Below are positions 353 through 16,811 of a stretch of DNA of 64,000 nucleotides, piece by piece. The position numbers and the translations under genes were made by a program. Each line of letters opens with the position of its first letter. Within the stretch, counting starts at the first letter, position 1. Location of the stretch: the IMG/VR virus record IMGVR_UViG_3300008261_000001, positions 62,001 to 126,000 of that record; one strand, written 5' to 3'. The notes under the pieces are model-generated. The model made no database searches, was not told the origin of the DNA, and saw only the letters and a program-made list of their open reading frames with translations.

Positions 353-784
353 ATGAGAGCAAAGACGACAAAGAACAGTGGGGGGGAGAGGGTGTGGGAG
401 GGTTGGGTATTGGATAAGTCTATATTGCTGTCGGGGGTGTTTGATTATGATTTAGCGTTGGGTTTGTATGAGGACATAGTGTGTGGTTTGGAGGAGTCTA
501 ATTTAAAGTTGAGGGGTAGTGGAGGTGGGGACAAGTACAAGATAAGGGAGTTTGTGGTGGGTAGTAGGGTTGTGAGGCAGGAGAGTTTGGAGTTATCGAT
601 GAGGATTTACTTAGTGCGGTCGAGTTTATTTGGTGGTGCTATATGTTATGACATAATGGTGGTGGGAGAGTTTGAGGATGAGGGTATGTTATCGGTATCG
701 GGTAAGAGGTTAGATTTGCCGATGGTGGAGGACTCTATATGGGTGGACATAAGGGTATGTTGGAGGAGTTTGGGAGGTGAGTAG
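353..784 (+). CDS. Hypothetical protein, 143 aa
   Basis: ORF with upstream AAGGTG; shares GERVW with the next ORF; extremely G-rich, C-poor coding strand. Confidence 0.6.
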   Translation: MRAKTTKNSGGERVWEGWVLDKSILLSGVFDYDLALGLYEDIVCGLEESNLKLRGSGGGDKYKIREFVVGSRVVRQESLELSMRIYLVRSSLFGGAICYDIMVVGEFEDEGMLSVSGKRLDLPMVEDSIWVDIRVCWRSLGGE

Positions 785-800
785 TTGGGAGGTGACTAAG

Positions 801-1139
801 ATGAACGAGGTAGGGGAGAGGGTATGGAGGGAGGAGTGGGTGTGGGTTTTTGTAAGTTCTCATTTTACGGTAGAGAAGAGGGAGTATGTATTACACCGAG
901 GGTTGAGGGAGGCTGGGTTTGAGTTATTTTCGCCTGTGGGGGGATTTATTTACGAGTTGGGTGTGTTAGTGGGTGGGGAGCCGAGGTATATAAGGGTGTG
1001 TGGTCTTGAGTCGGATGGTGGACTTGAGATAGGGATATACAATAAGTGGGATTTATTAGTTCGTGGTGAGTTAAGTGGGGGGGAGTGGGGGCTTTTATGG
1101 GAGCGTATAAGGGGGTTATGGGTGAGTAGTTTTGTATAA
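801..1139 (+). CDS. Hypothetical protein, paralog of 1164-1535
   Basis: ATG 801 follows GGAGGTG (preferred over the track start 777). It shares VLHxGLxExGF, GGFxYEL, YNKWDxL and LWERIRxLW with the next ORF. Confidence 0.75.
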   Translation: MNEVGERVWREEWVWVFVSSHFTVEKREYVLHRGLREAGFELFSPVGGFIYELGVLVGGEPRYIRVCGLESDGGLEIGIYNKWDLLVRGELSGGEWGLLWERIRGLWVSSFV

Positions 1140-1163
1140 GGGGCTTGGTAAGGAGGTTAGAGC

Positions 1164-1535
1164 ATGAGAAATGTTACGGAGAGAGACTTAGAGACTGGGA
1201 AGCGTAGGTGGAAAAGTGAAGTTTGTTATTTATTGGATGAGGGTGCGTTTATTTTAGTGTTGGATGTGTTGCACGAGGGTTTATTGGAGTCAGGTTTTAA
1301 GAAGTTAAATGTGGGTGGTTTTGAGTATGAGTTAGTGACAGCGGATGGGGAGTATTGGATAAGGTTGAGTTTGAAAGAGAATTCTTTGTTGGAGGTGAGT
1401 TTGTATAACAAGTGGGACATATTGGGTCGGGTGGAGTTGGAGAGAAAAGATTGGATAAGTTTATGGGAGCGTATAAGGGATTTGTGGGAGTGGGTATTGA
1501 GGTTTGCGGCGAATAAGTATCCGAACAATAAATGA
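1164..1535 (+). CDS. Hypothetical protein, paralog of 801-1139
   Basis: RBS AAGGAGG upstream; paralogous motifs as above. Confidence 0.8.
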   Translation: MRNVTERDLETGKRRWKSEVCYLLDEGAFILVLDVLHEGLLESGFKKLNVGGFEYELVTADGEYWIRLSLKENSLLEVSLYNKWDILGRVELERKDWISLWERIRDLWEWVLRFAANKYPNNK

Positions 1536-2510: not shown

Positions 2511-3095
2511 CTATATCAGAGAACCTAACTCTGTTGTTTGAAGTGTATAGGTTGAGCCTTGTGATGGTCTAGCCCAAGTCACCGTAAGACCCTCACCTCC
2601 ACCATACTCCTGCATTCTCGCCCTAAACGAATACTGAGTCCCTGCTGTCAAAGAAATCGTCCCTGTCATTGGACCACTCATCCCATGACCCCCATAATAA
2701 GAGACAACAAAGTTCCCCCCTATAAACAAATCGCTTCCGTCGTCAGAGTTGATGGCGAAGGTATATGTGCCTGTCTCTTGAGGGATAAAAGTTCCCTCAG
2801 CCATGAGGGAGAAATAATCTCCTGAGGCGAGCGTCACGCCCGCATTGGTTAGGCTCGTGTAGTTGGAGAAGTTTATAGCAGGTGTGGCGTTCAGAGTTCC
2901 TTGCCAAGAAAGAGTTGTGTTCGTGTACGCTGTATCAAAAAGCCTATCGAACTGAGCGGTCGTGGAAGGGTAGCTGTCGTACTGAGTCGTGCTTCCATTT
3001 CCTGCGTGAGTCCTATAGACCTTAACGCTTAGAGAACCCTCAACGAGTCCAATACGAGCATCGCTCAGTACGCCATGTATTAATCTGATTATCAT
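2511..3095 (-). CDS. PA14-domain carbohydrate-binding protein, probably virion-associated
   Basis: EGTFIPQETGTYTFAINSDDGSDLFI..YSFRARMQEYGGGEGL is the PA14 pattern; N-terminal MIIRLIHG leader. Confidence 0.8.
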   Translation of the reverse strand: MIIRLIHGVLSDARIGLVEGSLSVKVYRTHAGNGSTTQYDSYPSTTAQFDRLFDTAYTNTTLSWQGTLNATPAINFSNYTSLTNAGVTLASGDYFSLMAEGTFIPQETGTYTFAINSDDGSDLFIGGNFVVSYYGGHGMSGPMTGTISLTAGTQYSFRARMQEYGGGEGLTVTWARPSQGSTYTLQTTELGSLI

Positions 3096-3830
3096 TTAGT
3101 GTCCATAAGGTGTCTTGGTGGCATCGTAGAAATCAGTAACCTCTGTACTTGATAAGGCTTTATTCCACACATGGAAAGCCCCTAGTCTAAATATAGACCC
3201 TGCACCGCTACCCATATGCGTGCTAGTTGGATACCCAAGCGTGTAGTACAACCCCACGCTACTTGTATTGTAAGGGGTCTGTCTTGCTTTCACGAGGCTT
3301 CCTGCAAGCTGTCCGTTTACATAACCCCTCAGAGTCGTGCCGTCATACACGAAGCCTACCAAATGCCAAGCGTTCAACCCCGCACTCACAGACGAACTTA
3401 CCCAATAACCACTTCCTATCGTGTATGGCCAGACAGAAAAGTGAGGGGTGCCACTTATCCACTCTATCTGAGAGTCAAACCAAGAACTATCAGGTGCGGT
3501 TGTCCCTTGCTCCGATAAAATCACACCGTTCGTTGTCGGATAAACCCAAGTCAAAACAGAAATAATCGTAGAGGTATTAGGGGGGGATAGATAGGGGTTC
3601 AGATTGGTCGTGGTGCGTACATAATTTGAAGTGCTACTATCCAAGCTCAAGTAGTTGGGCGTACCGCTGGTGTAAGGAACGCTCCCCACGAGTAATCCGT
3701 TATTTGTCCCATCAAGGTCGGTGATTGCAGTACCCGTTCCCCCATAGGAAGAAAGATTTTGAATATCCCAAGAGGTGATAAGCTCCCCTAGTTTTCTCGC
3801 TAACGCCCCATGAAGAACACGGATTATCAT
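3096..3830 (-). CDS. LamG/concanavalin A-like lectin domain protein
   Basis: WHLVGFVYDGTTLRGYVNG..VWNKALSSTEV is the LamG_3 pattern; MIIRVLHG leader. Confidence 0.85.
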   Translation of the reverse strand: MIIRVLHGALARKLGELITSWDIQNLSSYGGTGTAITDLDGTNNGLLVGSVPYTSGTPNYLSLDSSTSNYVRTTTNLNPYLSPPNTSTIISVLTWVYPTTNGVILSEQGTTAPDSSWFDSQIEWISGTPHFSVWPYTIGSGYWVSSSVSAGLNAWHLVGFVYDGTTLRGYVNGQLAGSLVKARQTPYNTSSVGLYYTLGYPTSTHMGSGAGSIFRLGAFHVWNKALSSTEVTDFYDATKTPYGH

Positions 3831-5203
3831 GAGGGGTACTTATCCTTGTCGTTGTTGTAGTTCGCTAAGACTTCCGCCCCACTCAGAGCCTTACTATAAA
3901 TCCGTACCACCCCCACATCTCCATTCAGATATTGGCTGTACTCCCCATTGTTATAGCTCCCTATGTACAAGCCATTAGCCGTATTGAGTATGCTCGTGTA
4001 GCTCATAGCCGATGAGGTGTGTTCCACCCCATTTATGTAGAGATACATAAGATTATTCGTGTTATCAATCACGCCCACCACTTGATACCAAGTGCCTGTG
4101 GTGGCTTGGTATCCACTTGTGCTTGTAGCGGCAGAGCCGTTACCCACCTCAAGTCTGATTAGTCCTGAAGCGTTGCACCTGACTCCATAAGACACATCAG
4201 CCGAAGCCCCGCCATTATCAAACTTTCCAATCACCACCGCGTTTTGGATAACGGAGAGTCTTACCCATATCTCTATTGAGAAATCCCCCCCCGCTGGCTC
4301 TAGGAGGGCACTATCCGCTATGGCAATCTGAGAGCTAGAACCGTTGAAGCTGAAATAAGTTCCATTATCCACCACATTGCTCATCGTTCCCGTGAGCGTA
4401 TTAGGGGCAAGATTAAAGATAGAGTTCCCTGCATTTGGATAAGAGTATGAGTTGGAAGGCTCATAATAAAGCACAAGGGATTCGGTGATAAGGGGGGCGA
4501 TATTTCCTGCTCTAGCCGCGTAGTTTCGATAAACCTCCGAGTCTGAGAGGGCTACACTATATATGCGGATAATGCCTATCCGCCCATCGAAGTAAGTCCC
4601 ATCACCCTGATCGGTGGTGTCCTGAGAGCCAAAGTTCATGTAGAGGTTATTGGGTGATGTGTCCTCTGGAGAGTCCCAATTCACATTAACTGACCCTGCA
4701 AGGCTTCCATCTAGATAACCCTTCAGAGTCGTGCCGTCATAGGTCAATACGACTTGGTGCCACGCATTGAAGGATATATTAGATGTCGGACCTGTAGAGG
4801 TTATGGCGGATCCGTTCCAAAGACCATACTCAACCTTGCCCGCTACTATTTCTAAAGCTGAGTGGTGATACGCGGAGTTGGGGGTTTGCTGTGCGTTGTA
4901 CTGATACACCACACCATTTGCGGTGGGGTATATCCAAACCTCAGTTGTGTGTGTTTCTGTTAAGTACGCAGCCAGATTCTGAGTGGATATATTGTCGTTT
5001 GAGAAAGTGAGATAGTTAGTGGTGAACACAGGCGAGCCTGTTATGTCTCCATGAAGAAAGTTCCCTGAAATATCAGAGATAGTCGCACCTGAGTCCTTGT
5101 TGTAGGAGTTCTCATTAAAGGTGGAGAAATACACCACCAAGTTATTAAGGATAACGGACTGCTGAATAGCGGATATTATCCCATTGAGTGCTTTGATTAT
5201 CAT
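3827..5203 (-). CDS. Tandem two-domain LamG/ConA-like protein
   Basis: Two LamG units (WHQVVLTYDG..IRIYSVALS and WYQVVGVID..LYING..VRIYSKALS); MIIKALNG leader. Confidence 0.85.
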   Translation of the reverse strand: MIIKALNGIISAIQQSVILNNLVVYFSTFNENSYNKDSGATISDISGNFLHGDITGSPVFTTNYLTFSNDNISTQNLAAYLTETHTTEVWIYPTANGVVYQYNAQQTPNSAYHHSALEIVAGKVEYGLWNGSAITSTGPTSNISFNAWHQVVLTYDGTTLKGYLDGSLAGSVNVNWDSPEDTSPNNLYMNFGSQDTTDQGDGTYFDGRIGIIRIYSVALSDSEVYRNYAARAGNIAPLITESLVLYYEPSNSYSYPNAGNSIFNLAPNTLTGTMSNVVDNGTYFSFNGSSSQIAIADSALLEPAGGDFSIEIWVRLSVIQNAVVIGKFDNGGASADVSYGVRCNASGLIRLEVGNGSAATSTSGYQATTGTWYQVVGVIDNTNNLMYLYINGVEHTSSAMSYTSILNTANGLYIGSYNNGEYSQYLNGDVGVVRIYSKALSGAEVLANYNNDKDKYPS

Positions 5204-5553
5204 AGGTTCTTATCTATGTGCTGTATGAGAAACCATTGGGGATTACCCAAAGCATTAAATCCTGCAATAACTCCTATTACCCCATAATCTCTCGTAATGG
5301 TGTCTGAGGCTGCCCCATCTATATTATAAGTCGTTGGACTATGCACGCATTGGATAATCACATTTGAAGTATGTGCTGCCCCTAGCTTGATGTAATAACA
5401 CCGACCTCTTACGGAGGCGATAGTGGGGTCGGGAAGATTAATCGTCTGTCCATTCTGAGCAATGTAAAAGAAATCAGTAGAGGTTAGCTGATAGGGGTCT
5501 GAGTTGGTTGCGGTTCTTATGGGGTGGAGATTAGAATCTACTTTGAAGGTCAT
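5200..5553 (-). CDS. Small protein paralogous to the N-terminal domain of 7530-8726
   Basis: MTFKVDSNLHPIRTATNSDPY..GQTINLP..IKLG..ITRDYG aligns with MTYLVDNNLKPTKVASTSDPY..GQTITLP..VKLG..ITSDYG. Confidence 0.75.
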   Translation of the reverse strand: MTFKVDSNLHPIRTATNSDPYQLTSTDFFYIAQNGQTINLPDPTIASVRGRCYYIKLGAAHTSNVIIQCVHSPTTYNIDGAASDTITRDYGVIGVIAGFNALGNPQWFLIQHIDKNL

Positions 5554-5566
5554 GGTTCATCGCCTC

Positions 5567-6259
5567 TCACATGGTGGGGTAGCTGAAGGCTGTCCAAGAG
5601 ACACCCGTATTAGTGACGGTCTTATTCAGTCCGCTAGAGTCTGAAGAAACGCTTCCGCTCGTGGTTGCGAGGAGCAGGAGTTTGGTGTTGGCTACAGGAG
5701 AAATAGGTGTTTTAGGGGGGGTGAACGCCCCTGTGTAAAGAGCGGTGCCTTTGACCCAATGGAAGTTGGTTAAGTATCCACCGAAAGAAGCGTCTGCTGA
5801 GAGAGACAGCTCATTTCCAATAGTGAGAGAGTTAACGGACTCTGAGAAGTTGGTGGAGTTTGCGATAGACCCTATCTGGGTGCCATTCTTGAAGGCTCTC
5901 AGAGTTCCGCTTGAGCGAGACACAGCGAAGTGAACCCATTGGTTCTTAAAAGTTCCTGGTGAAAACCCTATGGCACTACCGCCTGCCCAAAAGTAGAAGA
6001 CCCCACCCTCTAAAGATACGCCTATGTTTGCACTTGGATAAGTTCCCATAGAGAACACACGAGGGAAAGCATTTGAGTCAGTCTGATACTGCCACCACTC
6101 TATGGTGAAGTCGCCTGAACCCATACGCAAATCGGCATCGTTGGCTACGACTAAATAATCTGAAGTCGAGCCATTGAAGTTCATAGTCCCCACAAGGGCA
6201 GGGGGTGTCTCGACAGTAAGGGTGTCAGAAACGATTCCATGTAGGGCTCTGATTATCAT
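5567..6259 (-). CDS. LamG/ConA-like lectin domain protein
   Basis: GDFTIEWW..WVHFAVSRSSGTLRAFKNG..TALYTGAFTPP; MIIRALHG leader. Confidence 0.8.
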   Translation of the reverse strand: MIIRALHGIVSDTLTVETPPALVGTMNFNGSTSDYLVVANDADLRMGSGDFTIEWWQYQTDSNAFPRVFSMGTYPSANIGVSLEGGVFYFWAGGSAIGFSPGTFKNQWVHFAVSRSSGTLRAFKNGTQIGSIANSTNFSESVNSLTIGNELSLSADASFGGYLTNFHWVKGTALYTGAFTPPKTPISPVANTKLLLLATTSGSVSSDSSGLNKTVTNTGVSWTAFSYPTM

Positions 6260-6265
6260 GTGCAG

Positions 6266-7492
6266 TTATCCAATAATCATCCAATGAAGGACACAAGTCT
6301 GAACAGCACCTGTCGTGTTATTCACACCCAAATCCACTATGAAGTTAGCTCCACCATTTATTTCTCTAATCACAGGACTTCGTGTGACTAAGAATAGAGC
6401 GTCATTAGGGGCTTGTAGCGTGACTTGTATCATGCTATTCGCCCCTATAAACGCACCTACTACAGTCTGTTGGATAACGGCATTTACGCCTATACCCACA
6501 TTAAAGCTCTGCCTTCCATAAGCATTAGAGACAACCACACTACTAGATACCGAGAGGACTCCATCTTGAACATAATCTAAAAGATGAAGCTCTTTATTTA
6601 CCAAGACCGCCCCATTAGTCGCTCCCGCATTACCTGTTCCCGGTGTGAGTTCTATATCGCCTGCTGTGTGACCCGCACCCCTTCCTTCTCCGCCATTTAG
6701 ATTTACTGACCCCCCATTAGACACAGCGATGAACCCCCCAATACCACCACCAGAAATATTGACGCTCCCTGCGGTTGCATCCACATTGTCAATAACGGGG
6801 CCTGCCAGCAAGTTAATATCTCCCCCACTAAACCCTGCACCCCAAACAGGTCCAGAGTAAATATTAACATCTCCCCCATCGGCAGAGGGATTATCACCCG
6901 CAGAAATAGTGATTGCTCCCGCACTCGCTACACCCCCACCACGCCCCCCATAAATCCCTATATCTCCCCCATCACCTGTAGGACTATCTGAACCTCTTAT
7001 TTCAACAGAGCCTGCGGGTCCTACCCCAAGTCCATTTCCCGATTGTATTGTGATTGAGCCACCCTGTTCCCCCTCTACTGTGGCATCACCACCCAAGATA
7101 GAAATAGATGTACCCTGTCCAAAACCCGTGACTCCATCTCCACCTACTATTTTATATTCAGAGTCTTCTAAGCCCACACTTGCTGTGTACTTGAATAGAA
7201 GTTCTCCTGTTTCTCCATCAAAATCTTCTTGAGTAATATTTCTGAACCCCTCAAGGAAAGTTGTTGAGATAAGCCCTTGATTTGAAAAAGTCCGTATCGC
7301 CCCTTGCTCATACGAGTACTGCACTTGCTCAGAGAATATTAAGTCAACATAGCCATCCACAGGGACATATTGAGGTGGCTTTCGGTTATTAACCCTTCCG
7401 TTTTGGTCTTTTCCGTCATGGACATCGGATAAGAAAATAGACGAGTTTATAGTGTTGGAGTGGGTCACTCTCAGTAAAGTTCCATATGCCAT
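6266..7492 (-). CDS. Gly-rich repeat virion structural/fibre-like protein
   Basis: Repeated GGDxxIxxG / AGSVxIxG beta-repeat units in the middle; lies in the structural block. Confidence 0.6.
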   Translation of the reverse strand: MAYGTLLRVTHSNTINSSIFLSDVHDGKDQNGRVNNRKPPQYVPVDGYVDLIFSEQVQYSYEQGAIRTFSNQGLISTTFLEGFRNITQEDFDGETGELLFKYTASVGLEDSEYKIVGGDGVTGFGQGTSISILGGDATVEGEQGGSITIQSGNGLGVGPAGSVEIRGSDSPTGDGGDIGIYGGRGGGVASAGAITISAGDNPSADGGDVNIYSGPVWGAGFSGGDINLLAGPVIDNVDATAGSVNISGGGIGGFIAVSNGGSVNLNGGEGRGAGHTAGDIELTPGTGNAGATNGAVLVNKELHLLDYVQDGVLSVSSSVVVSNAYGRQSFNVGIGVNAVIQQTVVGAFIGANSMIQVTLQAPNDALFLVTRSPVIREINGGANFIVDLGVNNTTGAVQTCVLHWMIIG

Positions 7493-7529: not shown

Positions 7530-8726
7530 TTAAGAAGCGGACAAGTCACCAAACAAGTACCAAGTGGTCGAAGTCCTCTTCACGAGCGTAGCCGCCCCAT
7601 ACTGACTAGAAATATATCTATTGCTAGACACCGAATAGAGGGTGTCGGAAGTAATAGCGATATTCACCTTGCCAGAGCCTAAACGAGCCACCACAATCTG
7701 TGTCCCTACAGGGAAGGCAACAGATGAGTTGGCAGGAATAGTGAGGGTGAGGTTAGAAGAGGAGTTGAACTCCACGAGCTTCCCTGCATCGGATAAAACA
7801 AGGGTGTAGCTTGAAGTCTGAGTAGAAATACCCAAAGCGGCTTTCTGTACGAACTCAGTTGTGGCTACCGTAGTGGAGTTATCCGTAAGAGTAGCGGTCG
7901 TACTCGTGATGCTTCCAAAAACCGCAGACCCTGCTGAACCCGAAAAGACTTCAGAGGAGTTGGTGGCATCAGGAATAAATGTGAAAGCAGACGCGGAGTC
8001 GTCATAGCCAAAGAAGCCCACTTTAGCAGCAGACCCATTGTGCCACCTAAACTCAATGCCCCTGTCCTTATTATCGTCAGATGAAGGGGCTGTGTCTCCA
8101 CCGAGAGTAAAGATAGGGTCATCTACGGTCGTGGTAGTGGAGTTGACGGTCGTGGTTGTTCCGTTTACGGTCACATTTCCTGTGACGACAAGATTTCCAC
8201 CTACGCTCAGACTATGTGTGGGGATTTCCCAAGTGTCATTGTCTTCATCCCACAAGAGTTTTGCGTTGGTGGCTTGAGTTCCGCGTTCCACTTCAAGCAC
8301 CACAGCGTCTGCTTCTTGAGAGGCACCTGTCCTATCCGCATTGATTAAAATACTTGGGTCTGTTGTGGTTGTCCTCTTGTTGACTCTGAGAGGTTTGTCG
8401 TTGGATAGAGTGATGCTCTCTTTAACGACTAACCACTTGCCCGTAGAAGCGATTAGCTCTACGAAGCCATAATCAGAAGTAATCTTGTAGCTTGTTCCAC
8501 CCTCTATCGTGTCGGTGCCTGACCTAGAAATAGTTACATCGGAGGTGCGAGCCTCACCTAGCTTGACTAAGAAAGACCTACCCACCATACTAGCGGTGAT
8601 TTCAGGAAGGGTGATAGTCTGCCCGCTGAGAGCCAAGTACTGCCCATCAGATAACCCTATGGTGTAAGGGTCACTTGTTGAGGCGACTTTTGTAGGCTTA
8701 AGGTTATTATCTACTAAGTATGTCAT
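7530..8726 (-). CDS. Tail fibre-like protein
   Basis: VTVNGTTTTVNSTTTTVDDPIFTLGG..DRGIEFRW module and a C-terminal TSSYTLVLSDAGK..FPVGTQI..WYLFGDL domain typical of phage fibre proteins. Confidence 0.7.
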   Translation of the reverse strand: MTYLVDNNLKPTKVASTSDPYTIGLSDGQYLALSGQTITLPEITASMVGRSFLVKLGEARTSDVTISRSGTDTIEGGTSYKITSDYGFVELIASTGKWLVVKESITLSNDKPLRVNKRTTTTDPSILINADRTGASQEADAVVLEVERGTQATNAKLLWDEDNDTWEIPTHSLSVGGNLVVTGNVTVNGTTTTVNSTTTTVDDPIFTLGGDTAPSSDDNKDRGIEFRWHNGSAAKVGFFGYDDSASAFTFIPDATNSSEVFSGSAGSAVFGSITSTTATLTDNSTTVATTEFVQKAALGISTQTSSYTLVLSDAGKLVEFNSSSNLTLTIPANSSVAFPVGTQIVVARLGSGKVNIAITSDTLYSVSSNRYISSQYGAATLVKRTSTTWYLFGDLSAS

Positions 8727-8748: not shown

Positions 8749-11700
8749 TTAGATGATGAACCAAGCAGTTCCATAAGCGATGAGGCTTAGGGTAGCACCT
8801 GCCGCGATGTCCTTAGTGAGTTCGCCCGCTATGGTCTGAGTGCCGTTCCCATCTACGGTGATGGTGTTTGTCCCCTTGTTGATTAACTGAAGGACATAGC
8901 CATCATAGGTAGAACCGCTGAGAGCAAAGAGGTTCAGAGTTCCTGCGGTCGCTCCGTTATTTAAGAAGTAAGCGTGCTTATTCTCATACGCTGTAGGTGC
9001 TGATAGGGTATAGGCATTGGTGACGAAGGTGGGTTCGACACACGAGTATCTTGCACCCTCAGAGGCTTTGGCAGTAATGACCCCATAAGAAGTCCCTGTG
9101 CCATTGTCCGCCATCCATCTATCTTCGCCTTCATCCCAAGTGAGCTTGGCGTTGGTGCTGTCTCCACGCTCTACCTCTATGGTCACATCTTCAGTAGCCG
9201 CAGGTGTTCCTGTTTGGTCGCTGTTGAGAAGGATAGAAGTCTTAGCAGAGGAGTTATCGCTTGAGGATTTAACTCTGAGATCTACGACTGCTGTGACTGA
9301 GCTTAGGTCAACCGAAGCGAGTTCTGAGTCTGAGGGCGTTACAGTAGTACCCTCAGAGTCAATCGTGGTTTCAGAACCGAAGAGAACGAACTTATCGTTT
9401 GAAGGCTGATAGACTAGCCCTGCGATGTAGTTTGTTCCTGCTTCTCGATATTGTCCGTAGAAGCCCACATGGTTGGCTGTTGTGTTATTGAGACCGAGGA
9501 AGAGGAGGGGGTCAGAGAGCTTAACAATAGAGCCGTTGCCCGTAATGATGCCACCGACCGTTAAGTCTGAAGTGATGGTTACGCTGTCGGGCAAGCCTAT
9601 GGATAATGTATCCGTACCCGTTCCGCTTACGGTGATTTCTTGGGCGTTGGCAGACTGAATAGTAAAGCTGTTGGTCGAACCCTGCTTGATAGCGTAGGTG
9701 TTTATGCTTACAAGCGTATCGTTGGAGTGAAGCACATTGTAGGCGTTAGTTCCATCATTGGAAATCATCCACCTATCTACGCCCTCATCCCACCTCAAGT
9801 AGGTATCGGTATTCGTGCCTCTATCCACATAGATGTAAGCGTCAACATCTGCCGCCGCGTTGACTACGCCTTGATTAAGAGTAAGCGTCTTGGTGGTAGC
9901 TATTGTGACATTGTCTTTGAAGGTGCCTGTACCTGTTATATCCAATCCGCCCGATTGAACGGTGATGCTCCCCCCTGTGATGAGCGTACCTGTGAAGTTG
10001 GTGTTTCCGTTAGTGGCATCCACCTCAAACACCACCGATCCGTTGTTAATAATGGATAAGTCAGTAGTACCTGTGGTGCTTGTAAGGGTGAGGGTGCCTT
10101 GAATAGATGTATTACCTGTGGTGTCAGCCACAACGAACTTATTCGTATCTACAGATATGCCACCATTAGCGTTGAGGTTGCCCGCTATCGTGGTCACGCC
10201 TGCATTGGTCACTCCAAACACCGCTGTGGGTACTGCGTTGTTTATGGTGAACCCAACATTGGATAAAGTCACCGCACCCTTAAACTCAGATGTAGAGACA
10301 GCCTCAAAGGTGTTGGTGGTTGTCTTACCCGTTGTGGTGAGGTTATCCGAGCCGAAGGATATCCCTGAGTTATTGGCGGTTGTGATAGAACCATCACTCA
10401 GAAGGAGAGAATTTAAGGCTACCCCAACAAGTAAATCGTTCTGTACTTCGACATTACCCGCACCTGTGAAAGTCCAATTGTTAGTGCCTTCATCCCAATA
10501 GAAGATAGCGTCTTCGCCCGCTGTGGGTCTAACTACGGTGATGCCGAAGTCGTGTGCGTCTAGCTCACCTGTTGAGTCAGAGTTGAAGGTGATTGCCCCT
10601 TGTGAGGGGGTGTCTATCGCCAACACACCACCCGTGGTCTTTATTGTCCCTGCGGATGTCACAGCACCCGCAGTACTTACCGAGAAGTTCTTGGTTAAAA
10701 CCCCAAGTGCCTCAGTACCTACGGATAACTCAGTAGAGGAGAAGAGCTTGCCCCCCTCTATCTTGAAGGAGTCCTCTGAGTCGTCCCACTTCAAGTAAGC
10801 GTCTACAGCACCTACCGCACCTCCATCCTCGACATGGATAAGTACAGCGTCAAAGTCTGCTCCATTAGGTACATCCCCCACCGCTCTGTCTGAGTTAAAC
10901 ACAACACCCGTATCCGAACCTGACTTCTTAATGTAAAGAGAATCGGATAGAGTTGTTATGCCTGTAATGGATAAAGTACTCGATAGAGAAGTCGCTTGAT
11001 GGAGCGTGATTAGCTCCGACCCGTTTGTCGTTGCGAGGGTCACATAGTCTAAGCCCGCTCCCGTTCCTTGACGGATAACCAACCCTGTCGCTTGGTTATC
11101 CGCCATTTCAACGATAAAGCCATCCGCGTCTGTGTTGGTGATTTTGTTCAGACTCACCACATCGGTTGTCACAACACCTGCTGTTGTGATTGTGGTTGTT
11201 GGGCTATTAGCTGAGTTTGCCCCACCTATGGACAAAGCGAGTCCTGCCGCCTTGCCTACAAGGTGTAAGCCTGAGGCGGAGTTGAGATTGATCTCATCTC
11301 TAGTCTCGTCCCAGCTCAATACAGCGTCTGCGGAGTCGCCCCTCTCAATCTTAATGAGGTTAGCGTCTTCTGCACCCGCTCCTGTCACATCAGCGTTAAA
11401 GATAATCCCATCTGTTAGAGACTTGTTTAAGAGCAAGTCACCGCTGAAAGTCACCCTATTGTTGGTCGTGTCCACAGCCAACACATCTGTGCCGTCAGCC
11501 TTCTCAACCACGAAGGCACTCGTGTTGCCTGTCTTAACATTTAAGGTGTTAAGGATAGAGGTCACACCCAAGTTGCTTACGCTAAATACGCTCGCTCCGA
11601 CATCAATACCCGCATTAGGCTCAAGCAGAGAAGAAATCGTAACCGCCTCTGTGCCGTCAGCCGTATTGATATTCAGTACATCTGTTCCATTAGCCTTCTC

Positions 11701-14700
11701 AACCACAAACGCTGTAGCAGAGTTCAGAGTTATCTGAACATCCCCCGTTGTAGCGAGCTTATAGGTCGCACCATCTACGGTGAACTTATCCGTATCTACA
11801 GCCAAACCACCATTCGCGTTCACAACACCTGATGAAGTAATCGTTGAAGTTGTGGTGAGCGTTCCAACCTTCAAAGCACCCCAAGTGCTAGGCTCAGTAA
11901 AGTCAGTAGCTGTAGAGGCTACATTGGTAAGACCCATCTTGAAGACAGAGTCGTTCTCGTCAAAGAAGAACACCGCATCGTCTTCGTCACTTCCACGCTC
12001 CATGAATATCCCGATGTCGCGTGTGTTATTAGGAGCCGCACTCGCTCCCTTATTCAAACGGATAACTGAGTCCGACACCTCTAGGTCAGTTGAGTTAATC
12101 GTGGTGAGTGTCCCATTCACCGTCATATTGGTGCAAGTGACGCTCCCTGTCGTTAAGAGGTTATTCGCCACGAAGTCTATAGTGGCTGTCGCGGAAGTAA
12201 TCTCGCCATTATTTATTGTAAAGTCCGCTATTGTGTGACCCTCTGCCTCTGCCGTTACCACCCCTGTTACACCTAGCGTACCTTCCACGGTGGTGTCACC
12301 CGTAGCGGAAGCCACAATGAACTTAGAAGCACCGACTGAGAACTCGCCCTCAGAGTTGAGCTTATTGGAAACAACCCAGCTATCTGCACTCTCATCCCAA
12401 AGGAGATAAGAGTTAGTCGCAGTACCTCTCTCGACCTCTATCCGGGCGTCCCTCTCTGCATTAAGGGCAGTCGCATCAGAGTTGAGAAGGACTACAGCCG
12501 ATTGATTATTTGCGTCACCCGCTAAATCAGCAGACTTAATAGATAACACACCCGATAGCTCTGTATTGCCTGAAGCAGAAGCGATAGTAAAGACCTTATC
12601 GCCATCTCTCACACCAACCGAGAAGTTCCCTTCAGAGTTTAAGCCATCTGTTACCGTGAAGCTCTCGTTAGTATCCCAAGAAATAGTGGCGAAGCTACCA
12701 CCCTTATTTACCCTAACAAGTGTAGCGTCAGCATTACCCACCGCCTCAGAACGGAAAGTCACTCCATTAGAGGAAGCCGTTGTAAGGTCAAGAGAGCCTA
12801 CTAGTGTGGTCTTACCCGTCACATCAAGGGTATTTGAGACCCCTACGCTCCCTGTCACATCAAGGGTCTTAGCTGGAGCGTTATTAGCGATACCCACTCT
12901 ATCCGTAGAGGCATCCACAAATAAGAGATGAGTCTGAGTATCACCCTCTACGCGGAAATCTGAGTCCGCTCCCGTTTCGTTAATAACCACACCACCATTT
13001 AGAGTCGTCACACCTGTGATAAGCGTGTCCCCCACCACATCTAGCTGAACGCTTGGTGTGGCGTTATTGATACCCACTCTGTCTGTAGAAGCATCGGTAA
13101 AGATTAAGTGAGTCTGATTGTCGCCTTCTACTCGGAAGTCTAAGTCTGCTCCGTTTTCGTTTACGACCACCAAGCTATTAAGAGCCACACCTCCTGTAAG
13201 GGTAGCGGTAGAGGTAATGGATAAGGGCTTGCTGATTGTGACGAGTTCAGAACCATCGGTGGTGTCAAACTTCAAGTAAGAGTTAGCCCCTTGAAGGACT
13301 TCAAACGCTCCCGCTTGGTTATCCGTCATAGAAACTTGGATAGTCGAAGCGTCAGCCGAAATAGTGTCTAAGGCTATATCCCCCACATTGGTGATATTCC
13401 CCTCAGAGACATTTAAGCTATCTACGGTGGTAGCCCCAAAGTCAGCGGTCCCCGTTGTTGAGATGTTATTGTCGTTGAAGCTGATAGCGTCTGTAGCCGA
13501 GTCTATATTTCCATTAGTGATGGTCAGATTTGCAATCACCGAAGAAGCGGGAGCCTCAATCAGCTTTCCAAAGACAACCTTCTCTGTGCCATTTGTAGTC
13601 ACGAAGGTCTGATAAGCATTTAGACCCTCGGCTATCTGTAGAGAAGTCGCTTGGTTATCCGTTAAAGACACAGCGATGATGTTGGTCTGAGCCTCGATTA
13701 CACCTACTGAAAGGGTGTGAACATCTGTGATGTCATTATCGGATAGATCTAGCGTGTTATTAAGAGTGGTTACACCTGTGACTTCAAGGGTTCCACCGAT
13801 GGTGGTATTTCCCGAAGCACTCTGTATGCTGAAGGTCTGAACATCGTTAATATCAGTAAAGGCTAACGAGCCATCCTTTATGGTGACTGAGTTAGAGACA
13901 TTAACGACTGAAAGGGTAGCAGTGCCTGTGGACTCAATGTCGGTGGCTGAAATATCCCCTGTTGTCGTGAGGTCATCATCACCAAAGCTGAACCCTGCTA
14001 CATTGGTGGTGGTCATTTCTCCGTTGTTGAAGGTTATATCAGCTAAGAGATGACCTTCAGCGGCGGTAGAAATAACTCCCGCATTGCTCAACGAGAAGGT
14101 CGCTCCGACAATCAAGTCGCCTGCGACAACGGATAAGTTGCCTGTAGTCACCTCAAGGGCATCTGAAAGCGTGAAGGTATCAGACCCTGCGTTCCAAGAG
14201 AGGTCCGAGAAGCCTTCCGCACCTCTGTTGACGCGAAGGATAGTGGCGTTGCCATCTAAGCCACCACCAGCTATCTCAGACCTAAAGGTGATGCCGTTAG
14301 TGGCGGCGGTGGTTATATTCACACTCTCAGTATAAGTGGTGATACCCTCAATGGTGAGGTTATCTTGCACCTTGAGGTTATTGGATAAAACCCATTCTGA
14401 GTCGGCTTGTACCCAAGTGAAAGTTGTGTAAGTGCCTACACCTGTACCAACAGCGAGGGCGACCGCGTTTTGAGCTGGAGTTCCTGTGCCATCCGCCACA
14501 TCAGAGTTAAGGATAATCAGAGGGTTGGTTGCGTCTGCGGTAGCCGCTTGGATAAGAAGGGCTTTATCCGTAGTGATAGTGGCATTCTCATTAAGGATAG
14601 TATCCCCATCAGCGGTCAAAGTACCCGCTACGGTGAGTGTTCCTGTCCCTGTAGTTGAGATATTTCCTGATGTGGTGAGATTGTTGTCGTTGAAGGATAT

Positions 14701-16725
14701 GTTATTATCAACAGCCGTTGTCTCAATAAGCCCATCGGAGATGGTTATATCTCCGATAGTGCTTCCTGAAGCGAGGGTCGATGTACCCACAACCTCAAGT
14801 GTGCCTTCGATTAGAGTGTCGCCGGTATCTGTAGCTACCGAGAACTTGGTGTTCTCATTTACATCTTGGATAGCGAAGGTCTTTGTTTCGCCAATGATGG
14901 TGGTGTTTCCATTAAGGGTAGTGCCATCACCTGCTGTGCCGTTGACGACAAGATTTCTTCCTACAACGAGGTCTTGTCCGATGTTGGCATCTACAGCCAC
15001 CTCAAAGTTATTGGATAAGACCCATTCTGAGTCAGCTTGAACCCAAGTAAGGGTAGCTGTGGTAGCCGCACCTGTCTTGACGGCTAGTACGGCATTTTGA
15101 GCGGGAACACCTGCTCCGTTTACATTGGAGTTAAGAAGGATAAGGGGGTCAGCGGGGTTGGTGGCTACCTGTACGAGCAAAGAAGCGTCAGTCGTAAGGG
15201 TAGCGTCAGAGTTAAGGGTAGTCGCCCCATCAACCTCAAGGGTGGTTGTGGTGGAAATATCACCGAGGCTGGAGATAGAGGCGGTGGGGGCTCCGAGGTT
15301 TGAGCCTACATCAAGACCACCTACGCCTTGAAGCGTATGAGAGAGAGCGAACTTCTCAGAGCCTTCGTCCCAAGTGAAAGACGAAGGTCCAAAAGCTCCG
15401 CGTGTAACTGAGATGATGTTCGCGTTTGCTTCCTCGCCTGCACCATCCAAGTCAGCGTTGATGACGATGGCGGAGATGGAGGGGTTTGCCTTAATGGATA
15501 AGTTGTCATCGAGGGTGGTGATGCCCGTTACGGCTAGTGTGCCTTCGATGATTGTGTTTCCATTATCTGAGTCCACCGAGAACTTAGAGGCACCCGCACT
15601 CGTCTTAATAGAGAAGGTTGAGTTGTCTGCTTGGAGGGTGGTGTCCCCATTAACGACTAGGGAAGACGAGGCGTTAAGGGTAGCGAGGTTAAGAGTACCT
15701 TTGGTGAGGGTAGTGGTAGCGGAGAAGTCTGTGGTGGCTCCCGTAGCTCCGTTAGCAGTTCCCAAGAAGAACTGATCATTACCTTCATCCCAATAGATAA
15801 CAGCGGGGTTTTCGGTTGAGCCTCTAGTAAATACAAAGCCTGCATCGGTGGAGGCGTTAGGGTTAGCGGAGGCATTACGAGCGAGTTCAATAACGGGGTC
15901 TTCAACGGATAAGTTATCCGTATTGACGGTAGTTGTGGTGCCGTTAACGATGAGGTTGCCTGTGACGGTGGCGTTGCCTGTAATAGTGGCATTACCGCCT
16001 ACGGAGAGGATATTAGTGATTAAGACTTCAGAGCCTGCACCACCGATGGTGAGGGTGGTGGGGTTTCCGAGTCCGTCATCGGTCATGGAGGCGGCGAGGG
16101 AAGCGTCAGCGTTGGTGAAGTTAATACCTGTCATACCTGAGAGGGTAGTGGAGGTATTTCCGAGTTCTATTTCGGTTGAGCCGATAGTGACAGAGTCGTT
16201 AACGAGCTTGTTATTGGCAATAGTTGCGAGGGCGATGTCCCCGTCAACGATAGTGTTGGCTACGATTTGGACTTCGCCTGTATTGGATAGAGTGACATCG
16301 CCTGTAATGGAAACATTTTTCCATTTATCATCATTAGCACCTGCGTCATTATCATAGACGAGGATTTGGGCGTTGGCTTTATCTACGATGTGGGTATCAC
16401 CGAGTTCTTCGAGGAGAATATCTGAAGCACCTGCGGAGTCAACATATGCTTTTGTGGCGACATCTTGAGGGAGGGTAGGGTCAGCCACATTGGATAGTTT
16501 TACGGTCACATCGCCATCGTTGTCGGTGAAGTCAACGGAGGTGGCTGGGTCAAAGTCAATATTGGATAAGTCGGTACGGGCTGTTTCAGTACCACCTGCG
16601 GTGGCTCCATCGTGTACGCGGATGCTATTGCGTGTGGTATCTACGGTAATCTCACCCGACGCACCGATAAAGGCGTTGTTTTCAGCCGAAGTACCCCTTC
16701 TAAGTTGAACTCTACGAACGGACAT
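8749..16725 (-). CDS. Giant repetitive tail fibre-like protein, 2658 aa, with an Mtd_N-like N-terminus
   Basis: N-terminal VQLRRGTSAENNAFIGASGEITVDT..RVHDGATAGG matches the major-tropism-determinant N-terminal pattern; about a dozen LNxD..DAxIxVxRG..LxWDE modules. Confidence 0.75.
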   Translation of the reverse strand: MSVRRVQLRRGTSAENNAFIGASGEITVDTTRNSIRVHDGATAGGTETARTDLSNIDFDPATSVDFTDNDGDVTVKLSNVADPTLPQDVATKAYVDSAGASDILLEELGDTHIVDKANAQILVYDNDAGANDDKWKNVSITGDVTLSNTGEVQIVANTIVDGDIALATIANNKLVNDSVTIGSTEIELGNTSTTLSGMTGINFTNADASLAASMTDDGLGNPTTLTIGGAGSEVLITNILSVGGNATITGNATVTGNLIVNGTTTTVNTDNLSVEDPVIELARNASANPNASTDAGFVFTRGSTENPAVIYWDEGNDQFFLGTANGATGATTDFSATTTLTKGTLNLATLNASSSLVVNGDTTLQADNSTFSIKTSAGASKFSVDSDNGNTIIEGTLAVTGITTLDDNLSIKANPSISAIVINADLDGAGEEANANIISVTRGAFGPSSFTWDEGSEKFALSHTLQGVGGLDVGSNLGAPTASISSLGDISTTTTLEVDGATTLNSDATLTTDASLLVQVATNPADPLILLNSNVNGAGVPAQNAVLAVKTGAATTATLTWVQADSEWVLSNNFEVAVDANIGQDLVVGRNLVVNGTAGDGTTLNGNTTIIGETKTFAIQDVNENTKFSVATDTGDTLIEGTLEVVGTSTLASGSTIGDITISDGLIETTAVDNNISFNDNNLTTSGNISTTGTGTLTVAGTLTADGDTILNENATITTDKALLIQAATADATNPLIILNSDVADGTGTPAQNAVALAVGTGVGTYTTFTWVQADSEWVLSNNLKVQDNLTIEGITTYTESVNITTAATNGITFRSEIAGGGLDGNATILRVNRGAEGFSDLSWNAGSDTFTLSDALEVTTGNLSVVAGDLIVGATFSLSNAGVISTAAEGHLLADITFNNGEMTTTNVAGFSFGDDDLTTTGDISATDIESTGTATLSVVNVSNSVTIKDGSLAFTDINDVQTFSIQSASGNTTIGGTLEVTGVTTLNNTLDLSDNDITDVHTLSVGVIEAQTNIIAVSLTDNQATSLQIAEGLNAYQTFVTTNGTEKVVFGKLIEAPASSVIANLTITNGNIDSATDAISFNDNNISTTGTADFGATTVDSLNVSEGNITNVGDIALDTISADASTIQVSMTDNQAGAFEVLQGANSYLKFDTTDGSELVTISKPLSITSTATLTGGVALNSLVVVNENGADLDFRVEGDNQTHLIFTDASTDRVGINNATPSVQLDVVGDTLITGVTTLNGGVVINETGADSDFRVEGDTQTHLLFVDASTDRVGIANNAPAKTLDVTGSVGVSNTLDVTGKTTLVGSLDLTTASSNGVTFRSEAVGNADATLVRVNKGGSFATISWDTNESFTVTDGLNSEGNFSVGVRDGDKVFTIASASGNTELSGVLSIKSADLAGDANNQSAVVLLNSDATALNAERDARIEVERGTATNSYLLWDESADSWVVSNKLNSEGEFSVGASKFIVASATGDTTVEGTLGVTGVVTAEAEGHTIADFTINNGEITSATATIDFVANNLLTTGSVTCTNMTVNGTLTTINSTDLEVSDSVIRLNKGASAAPNNTRDIGIFMERGSDEDDAVFFFDENDSVFKMGLTNVASTATDFTEPSTWGALKVGTLTTTSTITSSGVVNANGGLAVDTDKFTVDGATYKLATTGDVQITLNSATAFVVEKANGTDVLNINTADGTEAVTISSLLEPNAGIDVGASVFSVSNLGVTSILNTLNVKTGNTSAFVVEKADGTDVLAVDTTNNRVTFSGDLLLNKSLTDGIIFNADVTGAGAEDANLIKIERGDSADAVLSWDETRDEINLNSASGLHLVGKAAGLALSIGGANSANSPTTTITTAGVVTTDVVSLNKITNTDADGFIVEMADNQATGLVIRQGTGAGLDYVTLATTNGSELITLHQATSLSSTLSITGITTLSDSLYIKKSGSDTGVVFNSDRAVGDVPNGADFDAVLIHVEDGGAVGAVDAYLKWDDSEDSFKIEGGKLFSSTELSVGTEALGVLTKNFSVSTAGAVTSAGTIKTTGGVLAIDTPSQGAITFNSDSTGELDAHDFGITVVRPTAGEDAIFYWDEGTNNWTFTGAGNVEVQNDLLVGVALNSLLLSDGSITTANNSGISFGSDNLTTTGKTTTNTFEAVSTSEFKGAVTLSNVGFTINNAVPTAVFGVTNAGVTTIAGNLNANGGISVDTNKFVVADTTGNTSIQGTLTLTSTTGTTDLSIINNGSVVFEVDATNGNTNFTGTLITGGSITVQSGGLDITGTGTFKDNVTIATTKTLTLNQGVVNAAADVDAYIYVDRGTNTDTYLRWDEGVDRWMISNDGTNAYNVLHSNDTLVSINTYAIKQGSTNSFTIQSANAQEITVSGTGTDTLSIGLPDSVTITSDLTVGGIITGNGSIVKLSDPLLFLGLNNTTANHVGFYGQYREAGTNYIAGLVYQPSNDKFVLFGSETTIDSEGTTVTPSDSELASVDLSSVTAVVDLRVKSSSDNSSAKTSILLNSDQTGTPAATEDVTIEVERGDSTNAKLTWDEGEDRWMADNGTGTSYGVITAKASEGARYSCVEPTFVTNAYTLSAPTAYENKHAYFLNNGATAGTLNLFALSGSTYDGYVLQLINKGTNTITVDGNGTQTIAGELTKDIAAGATLSLIAYGTAWFII

Positions 16726-16734
16726 AGTGCGACT

Positions 16735-16772
16735 CCTCTGTTAGTCTATTTAGATACAGAGGGGTATAAAAG
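16735..16772 (-). promoter_or_regulatory. CTTTTATA motif plus RBS-occluding hairpin upstream of the giant fibre gene
   Basis: Inverted repeat CCTCTGT (16735-16741) / ACAGAGG (16756-16762) covers the GAGGAG SD; + strand TATAAAAG at 16765-16772. Confidence 0.55.
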
Positions 16773-16811
16773 CACTATTGTGTTTAGTGTGTGGGTTAGA
16801 TAATCTCTTTA

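What the first reader, a model, noticed from the sequence alone, without database searches (positions are those of the whole stretch)
2511..6259. Cassette of four lectin-domain genes sharing an MII(R/K)x(L/I)(H/N)G N-terminal tag
Seen: MIIRLIHGVLS (PA14), MIIRVLHGALA (LamG), MIIKALNGIIS (2xLamG) and MIIRALHGIVS (LamG); the tag is conserved although the domains differ. It does not look like a signal peptide (too short, no long hydrophobic core). Inference: a plug-in docking peptide that attaches interchangeable glycan-binding heads to a fibre tip, giving a modular host-range system without a DGR.
Basis: partly seen in the sequence, partly recalled or inferred. Interest (0 to 1): 0.62.

Follow-up and report, generated by a model that had tools for sequence, protein, structure and literature searches.

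The report
Shared N-terminal tag on phage lectins
Four neighbouring genes of an uncultured 290-kb jumbo phage encode sugar-binding-type domains that all begin with the same ten-residue peptide, which is most likely a plug that fastens interchangeable adhesins onto the tail-fibre network; this is a new small-lectin variant of the known 'docking peptide plus branching domain' design, and binding has not been shown.

Summary
Four adjacent minus-strand ORFs start MII(R/K)x(L/I)(H/N)G: 6259-5567, 5203-3827, 3830-3096 and 3095-2511. Pfam calls them LamG, 2xLamG, LamG and PA14. The motif occurs nowhere else in the 290-kb genome.

The tag is conserved at protein level across an uncultured jumbo-phage lineage, with consensus M-Φ-x-x-x-H-G-Φ-Φ. 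About 50 of 61 relatives of the 244-aa protein carry it.
- It is disordered in the AlphaFold model, is followed by a variable linker, and is not a signal peptide.
- Tag variants group by genome, not by domain family.
- Between this phage and its closest relative, DNA homology ends just after the tag-linker, where a different lectin body follows.

In seven genomes the first tagged gene follows a fibre 'adaptor' gene ending WYLFGDL. Here that is the 398-aa ORF 8726-7530, with one inserted gene between. Its N-terminal domain, and the 117-aa ORF inside the cassette, have the T4 gp10 / CBA120 XD fold (Z 10-12.6). That fold is the known hub for branched receptor-binding complexes.

The docking-peptide reading is therefore the best explanation (about 0.55). 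The one complex prediction gave no verdict, so the partner is unknown and binding is inferred. This is a new variant of a known kind.

The parts
5567..6259 (-). Tagged lectin 1: 230 aa. Tag MIIRALHGIV at 6230-6259, a linker to about residue 22, then a Laminin_G_3 domain.
   Evidence: Orthologues that directly follow the adaptor gene: L149 (233 aa), L156 (231 aa), L151 (234 aa) and G001 (234 aa).
5200..5553 (-). Untagged 117-aa protein made of a single gp10-like/XD domain. It is a candidate socket. Its stop overlaps the next start (ATGA).
   Evidence: 41% identical (E 1e-23) to residues 1-103 of the 398-aa adaptor. That domain matches CBA120 TSP4 79-181 (Z 12.6) and T4 gp10 47-150 (Z 10.4). A 117-aa homologue is present in L149 and L150; 111-aa, 120-aa and 110-aa small proteins of this type lie in L151 and G001.
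3827..5203 (-). Tagged lectin 2: 458 aa. Tag MIIKALNGII at 5174-5203, then two Laminin_G_3 domains.
   Evidence: The tag-linker is homologous to that of the L149 253-aa gene, but the body differs, with a breakpoint about 45-50 nt into the gene.
3096..3830 (-). Tagged lectin 3: 244 aa. Tag MIIRVLHGAL at 3801-3830, then a Laminin_G_3 domain.
   Evidence: 61 homologues, most of them tagged. AlphaFold2 mean pLDDT is 88.7, with residues 1-10 at 41.
2511..3095 (-). Tagged lectin 4: 194 aa. Tag MIIRLIHGVL at 3066-3095, a linker of about 12 residues, then a PA14 domain.
   Evidence: Tagged PA14-only orthologues occur in L149, L156 and L031. PA14 is nested inside LamG in L124, L125 and L151.
7530..8726 (-). 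398-aa fibre adaptor. N-terminal gp10-like/XD domain (residues 9-106, about 8409-8702), a shaft, and a C-terminal knob ending WYLFGDLSAS (residues 294-398, about 7533-7847).
   Evidence: The AlphaFold2 model has both terminal domains above pLDDT 92. Its orthologue lies immediately upstream of the first tagged gene in L149, L156, L151, L125, L031 and G001.
6266..7492 (-). 408-aa glycine-rich ORF lying between the adaptor and the cassette. It is probably an insertion and not a core part of the system.
   Evidence: Absent at this position in L149, L156, L151 and G001. A homologue lies elsewhere in G001. No Pfam or PHROG hit.
8749..16725 (-). 2658-aa giant fibre protein upstream, in the same operon direction. 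Its last 50 residues weakly resemble the gp10-like domain.
   Evidence: BLASTP E 0.013 against residues 52-101 of the adaptor. This is weak evidence only.

Best explanation
The four genes encode small accessory adhesins with lectin-type heads: LamG, 2xLamG, LamG and PA14. Each head carries a roughly 10-residue N-terminal docking peptide (M-I-I-R/K-x-L/I-H/N-G-Φ-Φ) and a flexible linker of about 5-20 residues. The peptide fastens the heads non-covalently to a common socket in the phage's branched tail-fibre network. The most likely socket is one of the gp10-like/XD domains (the N-terminus of the 398-aa adaptor, or the 117-aa protein). The C-terminal knob of the adaptor is the alternative. Because every head uses the same plug, heads can be added, lost or swapped by recombination at the tag-linker boundary without changing the rest of the fibre.

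Shown here: the tag, its conservation, its disorder, its genome-wise co-variation, the synteny with the adaptor, the gp10-like fold, and the recombination breakpoint.

Inferred: virion incorporation, the socket, and glycan binding.
For: 1. The tag is unique to these four ORFs in 290 kb. It is the best-conserved segment between paralogues whose domain bodies barely align.
2. About 50 of 61 relatives of the 244-aa protein begin with M-[ILF]-x-x-x-H-G-[ILV]-[IV], followed by a variable Ser/Thr/Pro-rich linker. Codons differ between genomes, so selection acts on the peptide.
3. In every locus fetched, every tagged ORF is LamG or PA14. PA14 is an unrelated fold, so the tag is portable.
4. AlphaFold2 leaves residues 1-10 unstructured (pLDDT 41), while LamG from residue 17 exceeds 90.
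5. Tags group by genome, not by domain family: MII in all 4 genes here and in all 3 genes of L149; MI[KR] in the 3 ATG-started genes of L156 (the fourth, a GTG start, reads VIRAIHGV); ML in both genes of L151; MF in all 3 genes of G001, including two orphan genes 27 kb from the third; MILT in both genes of L125. Orthologous bodies are meanwhile 49-75% identical between genomes. This is what co-evolution with one genome-specific partner predicts.
6. The first tagged gene directly follows the fibre gene ending WYLFGDL in L149, L156, L151, L125 (ATGA overlap), L031 and G001.
7. The adaptor's N-terminal domain matches CBA120 TSP4 79-181 (Z 12.6, rmsd 1.9 over 94 residues), T4 gp10 (Z 10.4) and T4 gp9 (Z 9.7). 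The 117-aa ORF is a stand-alone copy of this domain. Gp10-like domains are the known hubs of branched receptor-binding complexes (bioRxiv 10.1101/2024.03.21.586117). In Klebsiella phage KP32, a 29-aa conserved N-terminal peptide of RBP2 docks on such a domain and can carry foreign cargo (PMC13352976; PMC6872550).
8. Homology with L149 stops about 45-50 nt into the gene that follows the 117-aa ORF, and a different lectin body follows.
9. Laminin G3 domains are reported on the fibres of jumbo phages (PMC7824862).
Against: No binding is shown. The only complex prediction (398-aa adaptor plus 244-aa lectin, both as monomers) scored ipSAE 0.00. The tool says this must not be counted either way.

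The socket is not identified. Synteny points to the C-terminal knob, whereas fold analogy points to the gp10-like domains.

The C-terminal knob family is very widespread (486 hits, including Gordonia phage minor tail proteins). Most of those phages have no tagged lectins.

Some tagged genes sit far from fibre genes, among replication genes (L124, L154, P0018).

Genome-wise similarity of tags could also come from gene conversion.

No cultured phage carries the family, so no virion proteome exists.
Confidence: 0.55

Rival explanations
1. The tag is a capsid- or particle-targeting sequence like the T4 CTS on internal proteins. On this reading a short N-terminal peptide sends diverse cargo into the prohead, or to another virion compartment, and the prohead protease then removes it.
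For: The formal pattern is the same: a plastic locus of unrelated small proteins that share a peptide of about 10 residues. Three of the four window proteins have a Glu at residues 16-19.
Against: The linker has no conserved Glu or L/I-x-E site across the family; most relatives have Ser/Thr/Pro linkers without any Glu. The genes are syntenic with fibre genes in seven genomes, not with head genes. Lectin-type domains fit an external role. The Gly in mid-tag argues against a helical CTS.
Confidence: 0.08
2. The tag is an oligomerisation or assembly-chaperone handle rather than a plug for a fibre socket. Either tags of several lectins pair with each other into mixed bundles, or an assembly factor recognises the tag transiently (the phage encodes a GroEL-like protein).
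For: The peptide is short, hydrophobic and glycine-containing, and is disordered in the monomer. Several tagged proteins are made from one operon with overlapping stops and starts. A GroEL-like gene lies at 31433-32800.
Against: Genomes with a single tagged gene exist (L031, L154), which argues against obligate hetero-bundles. Nothing links the chaperonin to the tag. Synteny with the adaptor and the presence of gp10-like hubs favour docking.
Confidence: 0.12
3. The tag has no function of its own. On this reading it is a remnant of duplication, kept uniform by gene conversion, or it serves translation initiation or re-initiation in tightly coupled genes.
For: ATGATAATC is identical in the four window genes. 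Three of the four starts overlap or abut the previous stop. Tags are most alike within a genome, as gene conversion would give.
Against: Between genomes the codons differ while the peptide pattern M-Φ-x-x-x-H-G-Φ-Φ is kept. The tag is kept on orphan genes 27 kb from the others and on genes with ordinary spacers. It was transferred to a non-homologous PA14 gene. The linker next to it evolves freely.
Confidence: 0.1
4. The tag is an export or lipoprotein signal, and the lectins are secreted from the infected cell.
For: PA14 homologues in other phage contigs (L110-L140) do start with true Sec-type signal peptides.
Against: The tags have at most 3 consecutive apolar residues and a maximum hydropathy of 1.5-1.75, against 2.85-2.98 for those signal peptides. 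There is no lipobox cysteine and no AxA site.
Confidence: 0.03

Closest known systems
Klebsiella podophage KP32/K11/KP34 dual-RBP system: the conserved N-terminal peptide of RBP2 docks on the T4gp10-like branching domain of RBP1 (PMC6872550; PMC13352976)
   Same: A short conserved N-terminal peptide sits outside the functional domain. It acts as a portable plug and accepts foreign cargo. A gp10-like domain is encoded next door as the hub. Host-range modules are exchanged behind the peptide.
   Different: There the peptide is 29 aa, on one trimeric depolymerase tailspike of a small podovirus. Here it is about 10 aa, on up to four small non-enzymatic LamG/PA14 proteins of a 290-kb phage. There is no sequence similarity, and binding is experimentally shown there but not here.
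Ackermannviridae (CBA120, S117) branched tailspike complex: XD (gp10-like) domains of TSP2/TSP4 bind the TD1 domains of TSP1/TSP3 (bioRxiv 10.1101/2024.03.21.586117; PDB 7rej, 7rfo)
   Same: Residues 9-106 of the 398-aa adaptor superpose on TSP4 79-181 (Z 12.6, rmsd 1.9). Several receptor-binding proteins are encoded in a row and hang on one hub. Conserved N-termini allow gene exchange.
   Different: The attached tailspikes use a folded N-terminal domain (TD1), not a 10-residue peptide, and they are large trimers. Here one XD-like domain is also encoded as a free 117-aa protein.
T4 baseplate gp10 (with gp9) as the connector for gp11, gp12 and the long fibres (PDB 5iv5, 2fl8, 1qex)
   Same: The fold of the hub domain is the same (Z 10.4 and 9.7), as is the principle that fibre N-termini plug into it.
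   Different: T4's hub sits in the baseplate and carries fixed partners. Here the hub domains sit at the ends of fibre proteins and the partners are a variable lectin set.
T4 internal-protein locus with the capsid targeting sequence (from my own knowledge, not tested with papers here)
   Same: It is a hyperplastic cassette of unrelated small proteins that share an N-terminal peptide of about 10 residues.
   Different: The CTS is followed by a protease site and leads into the head. Here there is no conserved cleavage motif, and the synteny is with fibre genes.

Membership tests
Branched RBP system with docking peptide and gp10-like branching domain (KP32 type) | Secondary RBPs carry a short conserved N-terminal peptide that is not part of the functional domain | tested here: met
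   AlphaFold2 pLDDT is 41 for residues 1-10 and above 90 from residue 17.
Branched RBP system with docking peptide and gp10-like branching domain (KP32 type) | A T4 gp10-like branching domain in the primary RBP, or next to it | tested here: met
   The adaptor's N-terminal domain matches T4 gp10 47-150 (Z 10.4), CBA120 TSP4 79-181 (Z 12.6) and T4 gp9 (Z 9.7). The 117-aa ORF is 41% identical to it.
Branched RBP system with docking peptide and gp10-like branching domain (KP32 type) | The peptide binds the branching domain and is needed for virion incorporation | tested here: inconclusive
   Complex prediction of the 398-aa and 244-aa proteins gave ipSAE 0.00, 'no answer'. Only one pairing was tried, with monomers. 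Incorporation itself cannot be tested with these tools.
Branched RBP system with docking peptide and gp10-like branching domain (KP32 type) | The attached RBPs are trimeric depolymerase tailspikes | tested here: not met
   Pfam finds only Laminin_G_3 and PA14. The model of the 244-aa protein is a single LamG sandwich.
Ackermannviridae TSP complex | The attached proteins start with a folded TD1 domain that binds XD3 | tested here: not met
   Only about 10 tag residues plus a short linker precede the lectin domain.
T4-type capsid targeting sequence | The tag is followed by a conserved prohead-protease site (L/I-x-E), and the genes are linked to head genes | tested here: not met
   There is no conserved Glu in the linker across 34 aligned relatives. 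The neighbours are fibre genes.
Sec or lipoprotein signal peptide | A basic n-region, a hydrophobic core of at least 10 residues, and a cleavage site or lipobox | tested here: not met
   The longest apolar run is 3 residues and the maximum hydropathy is 1.5-1.75, against 2.85-2.98 in true signal-bearing homologues. There is no Cys.
Pfam Laminin_G_3 / PA14 carbohydrate-binding domains | Score above the curated Pfam cut-off | tested here: met
   Scores are 48.8, 141.3 and 44.4 bits against a cut-off of 27.6, and 59.5 bits against 24. Sugar binding itself was not tested.
DGR-diversified receptor-binding protein | A reverse transcriptase is present in the genome | tested here: not met
   There is no RVT_1 match in the 290-kb record, which is 93% complete.

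The most novel reading that the evidence does not exclude
The tag is a general display handle for monomeric cargo. Several different lectins compete for the same few gp10-like sockets, so that virions from one burst carry different adhesin mixtures (bet-hedging on host glycans). Tag-bounded cassettes, each a body plus the next tag, then move between jumbo phages by recombination at the tag. That would make this a lectin cassette system comparable in logic to integron cassettes and independent of DGRs.
Probability: 0.2. Interest if true: 0.7.

Novelty: new variant of a known kind. Interest (0 to 1): 0.5.

Why it matters
If the tag is a docking peptide, it extends the 'conserved peptide plus gp10-like branching domain' principle beyond small Klebsiella, Escherichia and Salmonella phages with trimeric enzyme spikes. 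It would then also cover uncultured jumbo phages that hang small, probably monomeric, lectins on their fibres. It would also give a very short (about 10-residue) natural tag for displaying cargo on a phage particle. Finally, it would give a sequence signature (M-Φ-x-x-x-H-G-Φ-Φ at the start of LamG/PA14 ORFs next to a WYLFGDL fibre gene) for finding host-range modules in metagenomes.

Tried and rejected
Steps that led nowhere:
- Complex prediction of the full 398-aa adaptor with the 244-aa tagged LamG, using my own alignments A2 and A1, scored ipSAE 0.00 twice, so 'no answer'. It is not evidence either way. The 117-aa protein, trimeric sockets and the 2658-aa C-terminus could not be tried because the cap is one job.
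- A megablast of the region against cultured phages found nothing. A tblastn of the 244-aa protein also found nothing.
- PDB sequence searches with the 398-aa and 117-aa proteins found nothing useful.
- A first regular-expression scan for the exact tag in relatives of the 230-aa LamG and of PA14 found none. Relatives carry variant tags, which only became visible after reading the N-termini.
- The promoter and terminator scan was uninformative.

Ideas considered and dropped:
- The C-terminal HWMIIG of the 408-aa ORF, in frame with the next MIIR start, as a read-through or tag-related element. Relatives lack this gene at that place, and its tail shows no significant similarity to the adaptor.
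- The C-terminus of the 2658-aa fibre as an established gp10-like domain. The similarity is only weak (E 0.013).
- The tag as a DNA-level recombination or translation signal conserved across genomes. The codons differ between genomes.


Full report
**Observation**

The window is bases 62,001-126,000 of a 290,179-bp IMG/VR virus record that is 93% complete. On the minus strand lie four adjacent ORFs:
- 6259-5567, 230 aa, starting MIIRALHGIVS
- 5203-3827, 458 aa, starting MIIKALNGIIS
- 3830-3096, 244 aa, starting MIIRVLHGALA
- 3095-2511, 194 aa, starting MIIRLIHGVLS

Pfam assigns Laminin_G_3, two Laminin_G_3 stretches, Laminin_G_3 and PA14 respectively, all above the curated cut-offs.

A six-frame scan of the whole genome finds MII[RK]..[HN]G at these four places only. 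Each lies 0-3 codons after the preceding stop. At DNA level only ATGATAATC is shared, and the following codons vary synonymously. BLASTP between the 230-aa and 244-aa proteins gives the tag as the top segment (8/14 identical), while the domain bodies hardly align. An untagged 117-aa ORF (5553-5200) lies inside the cassette.

**The tag is a feature of a lineage**

The word search with the 244-aa protein returned 62 proteins, one of which is the window's own protein. Their N-termini read MLIATHGIIKP, MFLATHGIVKP, MLKATHGIIKP, MIKSIHGLV, MIIKSIHGIIS, MIKAIHGVAK and MILTSYGMIKN. This gives a consensus of M-Φ-x-x-x-H-G-Φ-Φ, followed by a Ser/Thr/Pro-rich linker of variable length, and then the LamG domain (alignment A1). 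More distant members have other N-termini.

Codons for the tag differ between genomes, so the peptide is what is conserved. In all fetched loci, every ORF with the generalised tag is a LamG or PA14 protein. No cultured phage in the 50,697-record collection has a homologue.

**The tag lies outside the fold and is not a signal peptide**

AlphaFold2 on A1 gives a confident LamG sandwich from residue 17 (mean pLDDT 88.7) but only 41 for residues 1-10. Homologues without the tag start where the domain starts.

The tags have at most three consecutive apolar residues. Their maximum 11-residue hydropathy is 1.5-1.75. PA14 homologues from other phage contigs that carry real Sec-type leaders score 2.85-2.98. 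The linker has no conserved Glu or other cleavage motif.

**Comparative genomics**

The closest relative, L149, encodes in order:
- a giant fibre
- a 456-aa adaptor ending WYLFGDLSAS
- MIIR-LamG (233 aa)
- a 117-aa protein
- MIIK-LamG (253 aa)
- MIIR-PA14 (193 aa)

Other relatives:
- L156 has a 496-aa adaptor ending WYLFGDLGA, followed by four tagged genes. Three start MI[KR]xxHG; the fourth uses a GTG start and reads VIRAIHGV.
- L151 has a 1063-aa adaptor, then MLIATHG-LamG with PA14 nested inside, and MLKATHG-LamG.
- L125 has a collagen-like 255-aa fibre ending WYLFGDLK. Its stop overlaps the start of MILTGIGMIKN-LamG/PA14, which is followed by MILTSYGMIKN-LamG.
- L031 has a 378-aa fibre ending WYLFGDLGA, then MIKITHG-PA14.
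- G001, a complete 316-kb genome, has an adaptor followed by MFKATHG-LamG. It also has two orphan tagged genes 27 kb away, among replication genes, starting MFLATHGI(I/V)KP.

The first tagged gene therefore follows the WYLFGDL fibre gene in seven genomes. In the window a 408-aa gene (7492-6266) is inserted between them, and its G001 homologue lies elsewhere.

Tag variants are uniform within a genome (MII, MI[KR], ML, MF, MILT) and differ between genomes. Orthologous domain bodies, in contrast, are 49-75% identical between genomes, and paralogous bodies within a genome are barely alignable. This concerted pattern, which includes genes 27 kb apart, is what a shared genome-specific partner would produce. 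Gene conversion is the alternative.

**Modularity**

I anchored an ungapped comparison of the window and L149 on the ATG that follows the 117-aa gene. DNA identity is 60-90% through the 117-aa gene and about 70% through the first 45 nt of the next gene (the tag and the linker MIIKxxxGIISAIQxS). It then falls to about 25%.

Behind that point the window has the 2xLamG body, followed by a fresh tag and the LamG244 body. L149 goes straight into the orthologue of LamG244. The unit that differs is therefore 'body plus next tag', bounded by tags.

PA14 is a separate tagged gene in the window, L149, L156 and L031. It is nested inside LamG in L124, L125 and L151. The genome has no RVT_1 reverse transcriptase.

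**The likely socket**

AlphaFold2 on the 398-aa adaptor (alignment A2) gives two confident terminal domains, residues 10-105 and 300-398, both with pLDDT above 92.

Foldseek and VIA-align place residues 9-106 on the following:
- CBA120 TSP4 79-181 (Z 12.6, rmsd 1.9 over 94 residues)
- an Acinetobacter phage tailspike (Z 11.9)
- Klebsiella phage KP1 baseplate proteins (Z 11.4-11.6)
- T4 gp10 47-150 (Z 10.4)
- T4 gp9 (Z 9.7)

Residues 294-395 match the C-terminal domain of the Pseudomonas phage Pa223 capsid spike (Z 14.9).

The 117-aa ORF is 41% identical to the adaptor's N-terminal domain (E 1e-23). These are the only two copies detectable by sequence in the genome. The tail of the 2658-aa fibre resembles the domain only weakly (E 0.013).

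The C-terminal knob family is very common in phage fibres: 486 hits, including Gordonia phage minor tail proteins.

Gp10-like (XD) domains are the documented protein-protein hubs of branched receptor-binding complexes (bioRxiv 10.1101/2024.03.21.586117). In KP32, the first 29 residues of RBP2 dock on such a domain, are required for incorporation, and can carry a foreign enzyme (PMC13352976; PMC6872550). Laminin G3 domains on the fibres of jumbo phages have been noted before (PMC7824862).

**Mechanism proposed**

Each lectin head has a short plug and a flexible linker. The plugs bind a common socket in the fibre network. The gp10-like domains are favoured by fold analogy, and the WYLFGDL knob is favoured by synteny. 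Heads are exchanged by recombination at the tag-linker boundary.

Shown: the tag, its conservation, its disorder, its co-variation by genome, the synteny, the hub fold and the breakpoint.

Inferred: binding, presence in the virion, the socket and sugar recognition.

It is listed only under what was tried.

**Rivals**
- A T4-CTS-like targeting peptide. This has the same formal pattern, but there is no conserved cleavage site and the synteny is with fibre genes.
- An oligomerisation or chaperone handle.
- A functionless remnant homogenised by gene conversion, or a translation signal. This is contradicted by peptide-level conservation with differing codons, and by retention on orphan genes.
- A signal peptide. 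This is contradicted by the composition of the tag.

**Verdict**

This is best filed as a new variant of the known docking-peptide and branching-domain architecture. The differences are small LamG/PA14 heads, a tag of about 10 residues, up to four heads per genome, and a free-standing hub domain, all in an uncultured jumbo-phage lineage. Interest is moderate (0.5). It rises if binding and mixed display are demonstrated.

Noticed in passing
window 353-1535 (+): Three tandem small ORFs of 143, 120 and 123 aa lie in a stretch with GC skew +0.51. The second and third share YNKWD[LI]L...LWERIR.LW. The first and third, the two scanned, have no Pfam hit.
   Followed up: partly
window 6266-7492 (-): A 408-aa glycine-rich ORF sits between the adaptor and the cassette. 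It is absent at that position in L149, L156, L151 and G001, and its homologue in G001 lies about 200 kb away, next to a protein with a gp10-like domain. It ends HWMIIG and is in frame with the next MIIR start, two codons on, which is probably coincidence.
   Followed up: partly
window 8697-8726 and 5524-5553 (-); L151 1658, 12022: There is a second conserved N-terminal motif, M(T/S)(Y/F)xVD(N/S)N(L/K), on the proteins that start with the gp10-like domain (398 aa, 117 aa and the fibre proteins of relatives). Residues 1-6 have low confidence in the model, so this may be a second class of docking peptide.
   Followed up: no
L124 9566-10843; L125 2423-3676; L151 10001-11260: In relatives the PA14 domain is nested inside a LamG domain (418-425 aa). 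In the window, L149, L156 and L031 it is a separate gene with its own tag.
   Followed up: partly
L110-L140 (for example L110 9851-11002, L132 1401-2531): The closest PA14 homologues outside the lineage sit in other phage contigs and start with true Sec-type signal peptides instead of the tag. They lie in a row of signal-peptide proteins.
   Followed up: partly
window 33213-38637 (+): A run of about nine ORFs of roughly 150-260 aa with overlapping stops and starts. Several match only halves of the N6_N4 DNA methylase family.
   Followed up: partly
window 8749-23954 (-): Two giant fibre-like proteins of 2658 and 2380 aa with many internal repeats, for example about a dozen xVxRGxxxxxxLxWDExxDxW units in the first. 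The central motif of the 398-aa adaptor is 78-81% identical to cyanophage tail-fibre and structural proteins.
   Followed up: partly
window 31433-32800 (+) and 24129-63255: A GroEL-like chaperonin gene, and a replication and recombination module (UvsX-like, SbcCD-like, clamp and clamp loader, helicase), lie directly beside the fibre module.
   Followed up: partly
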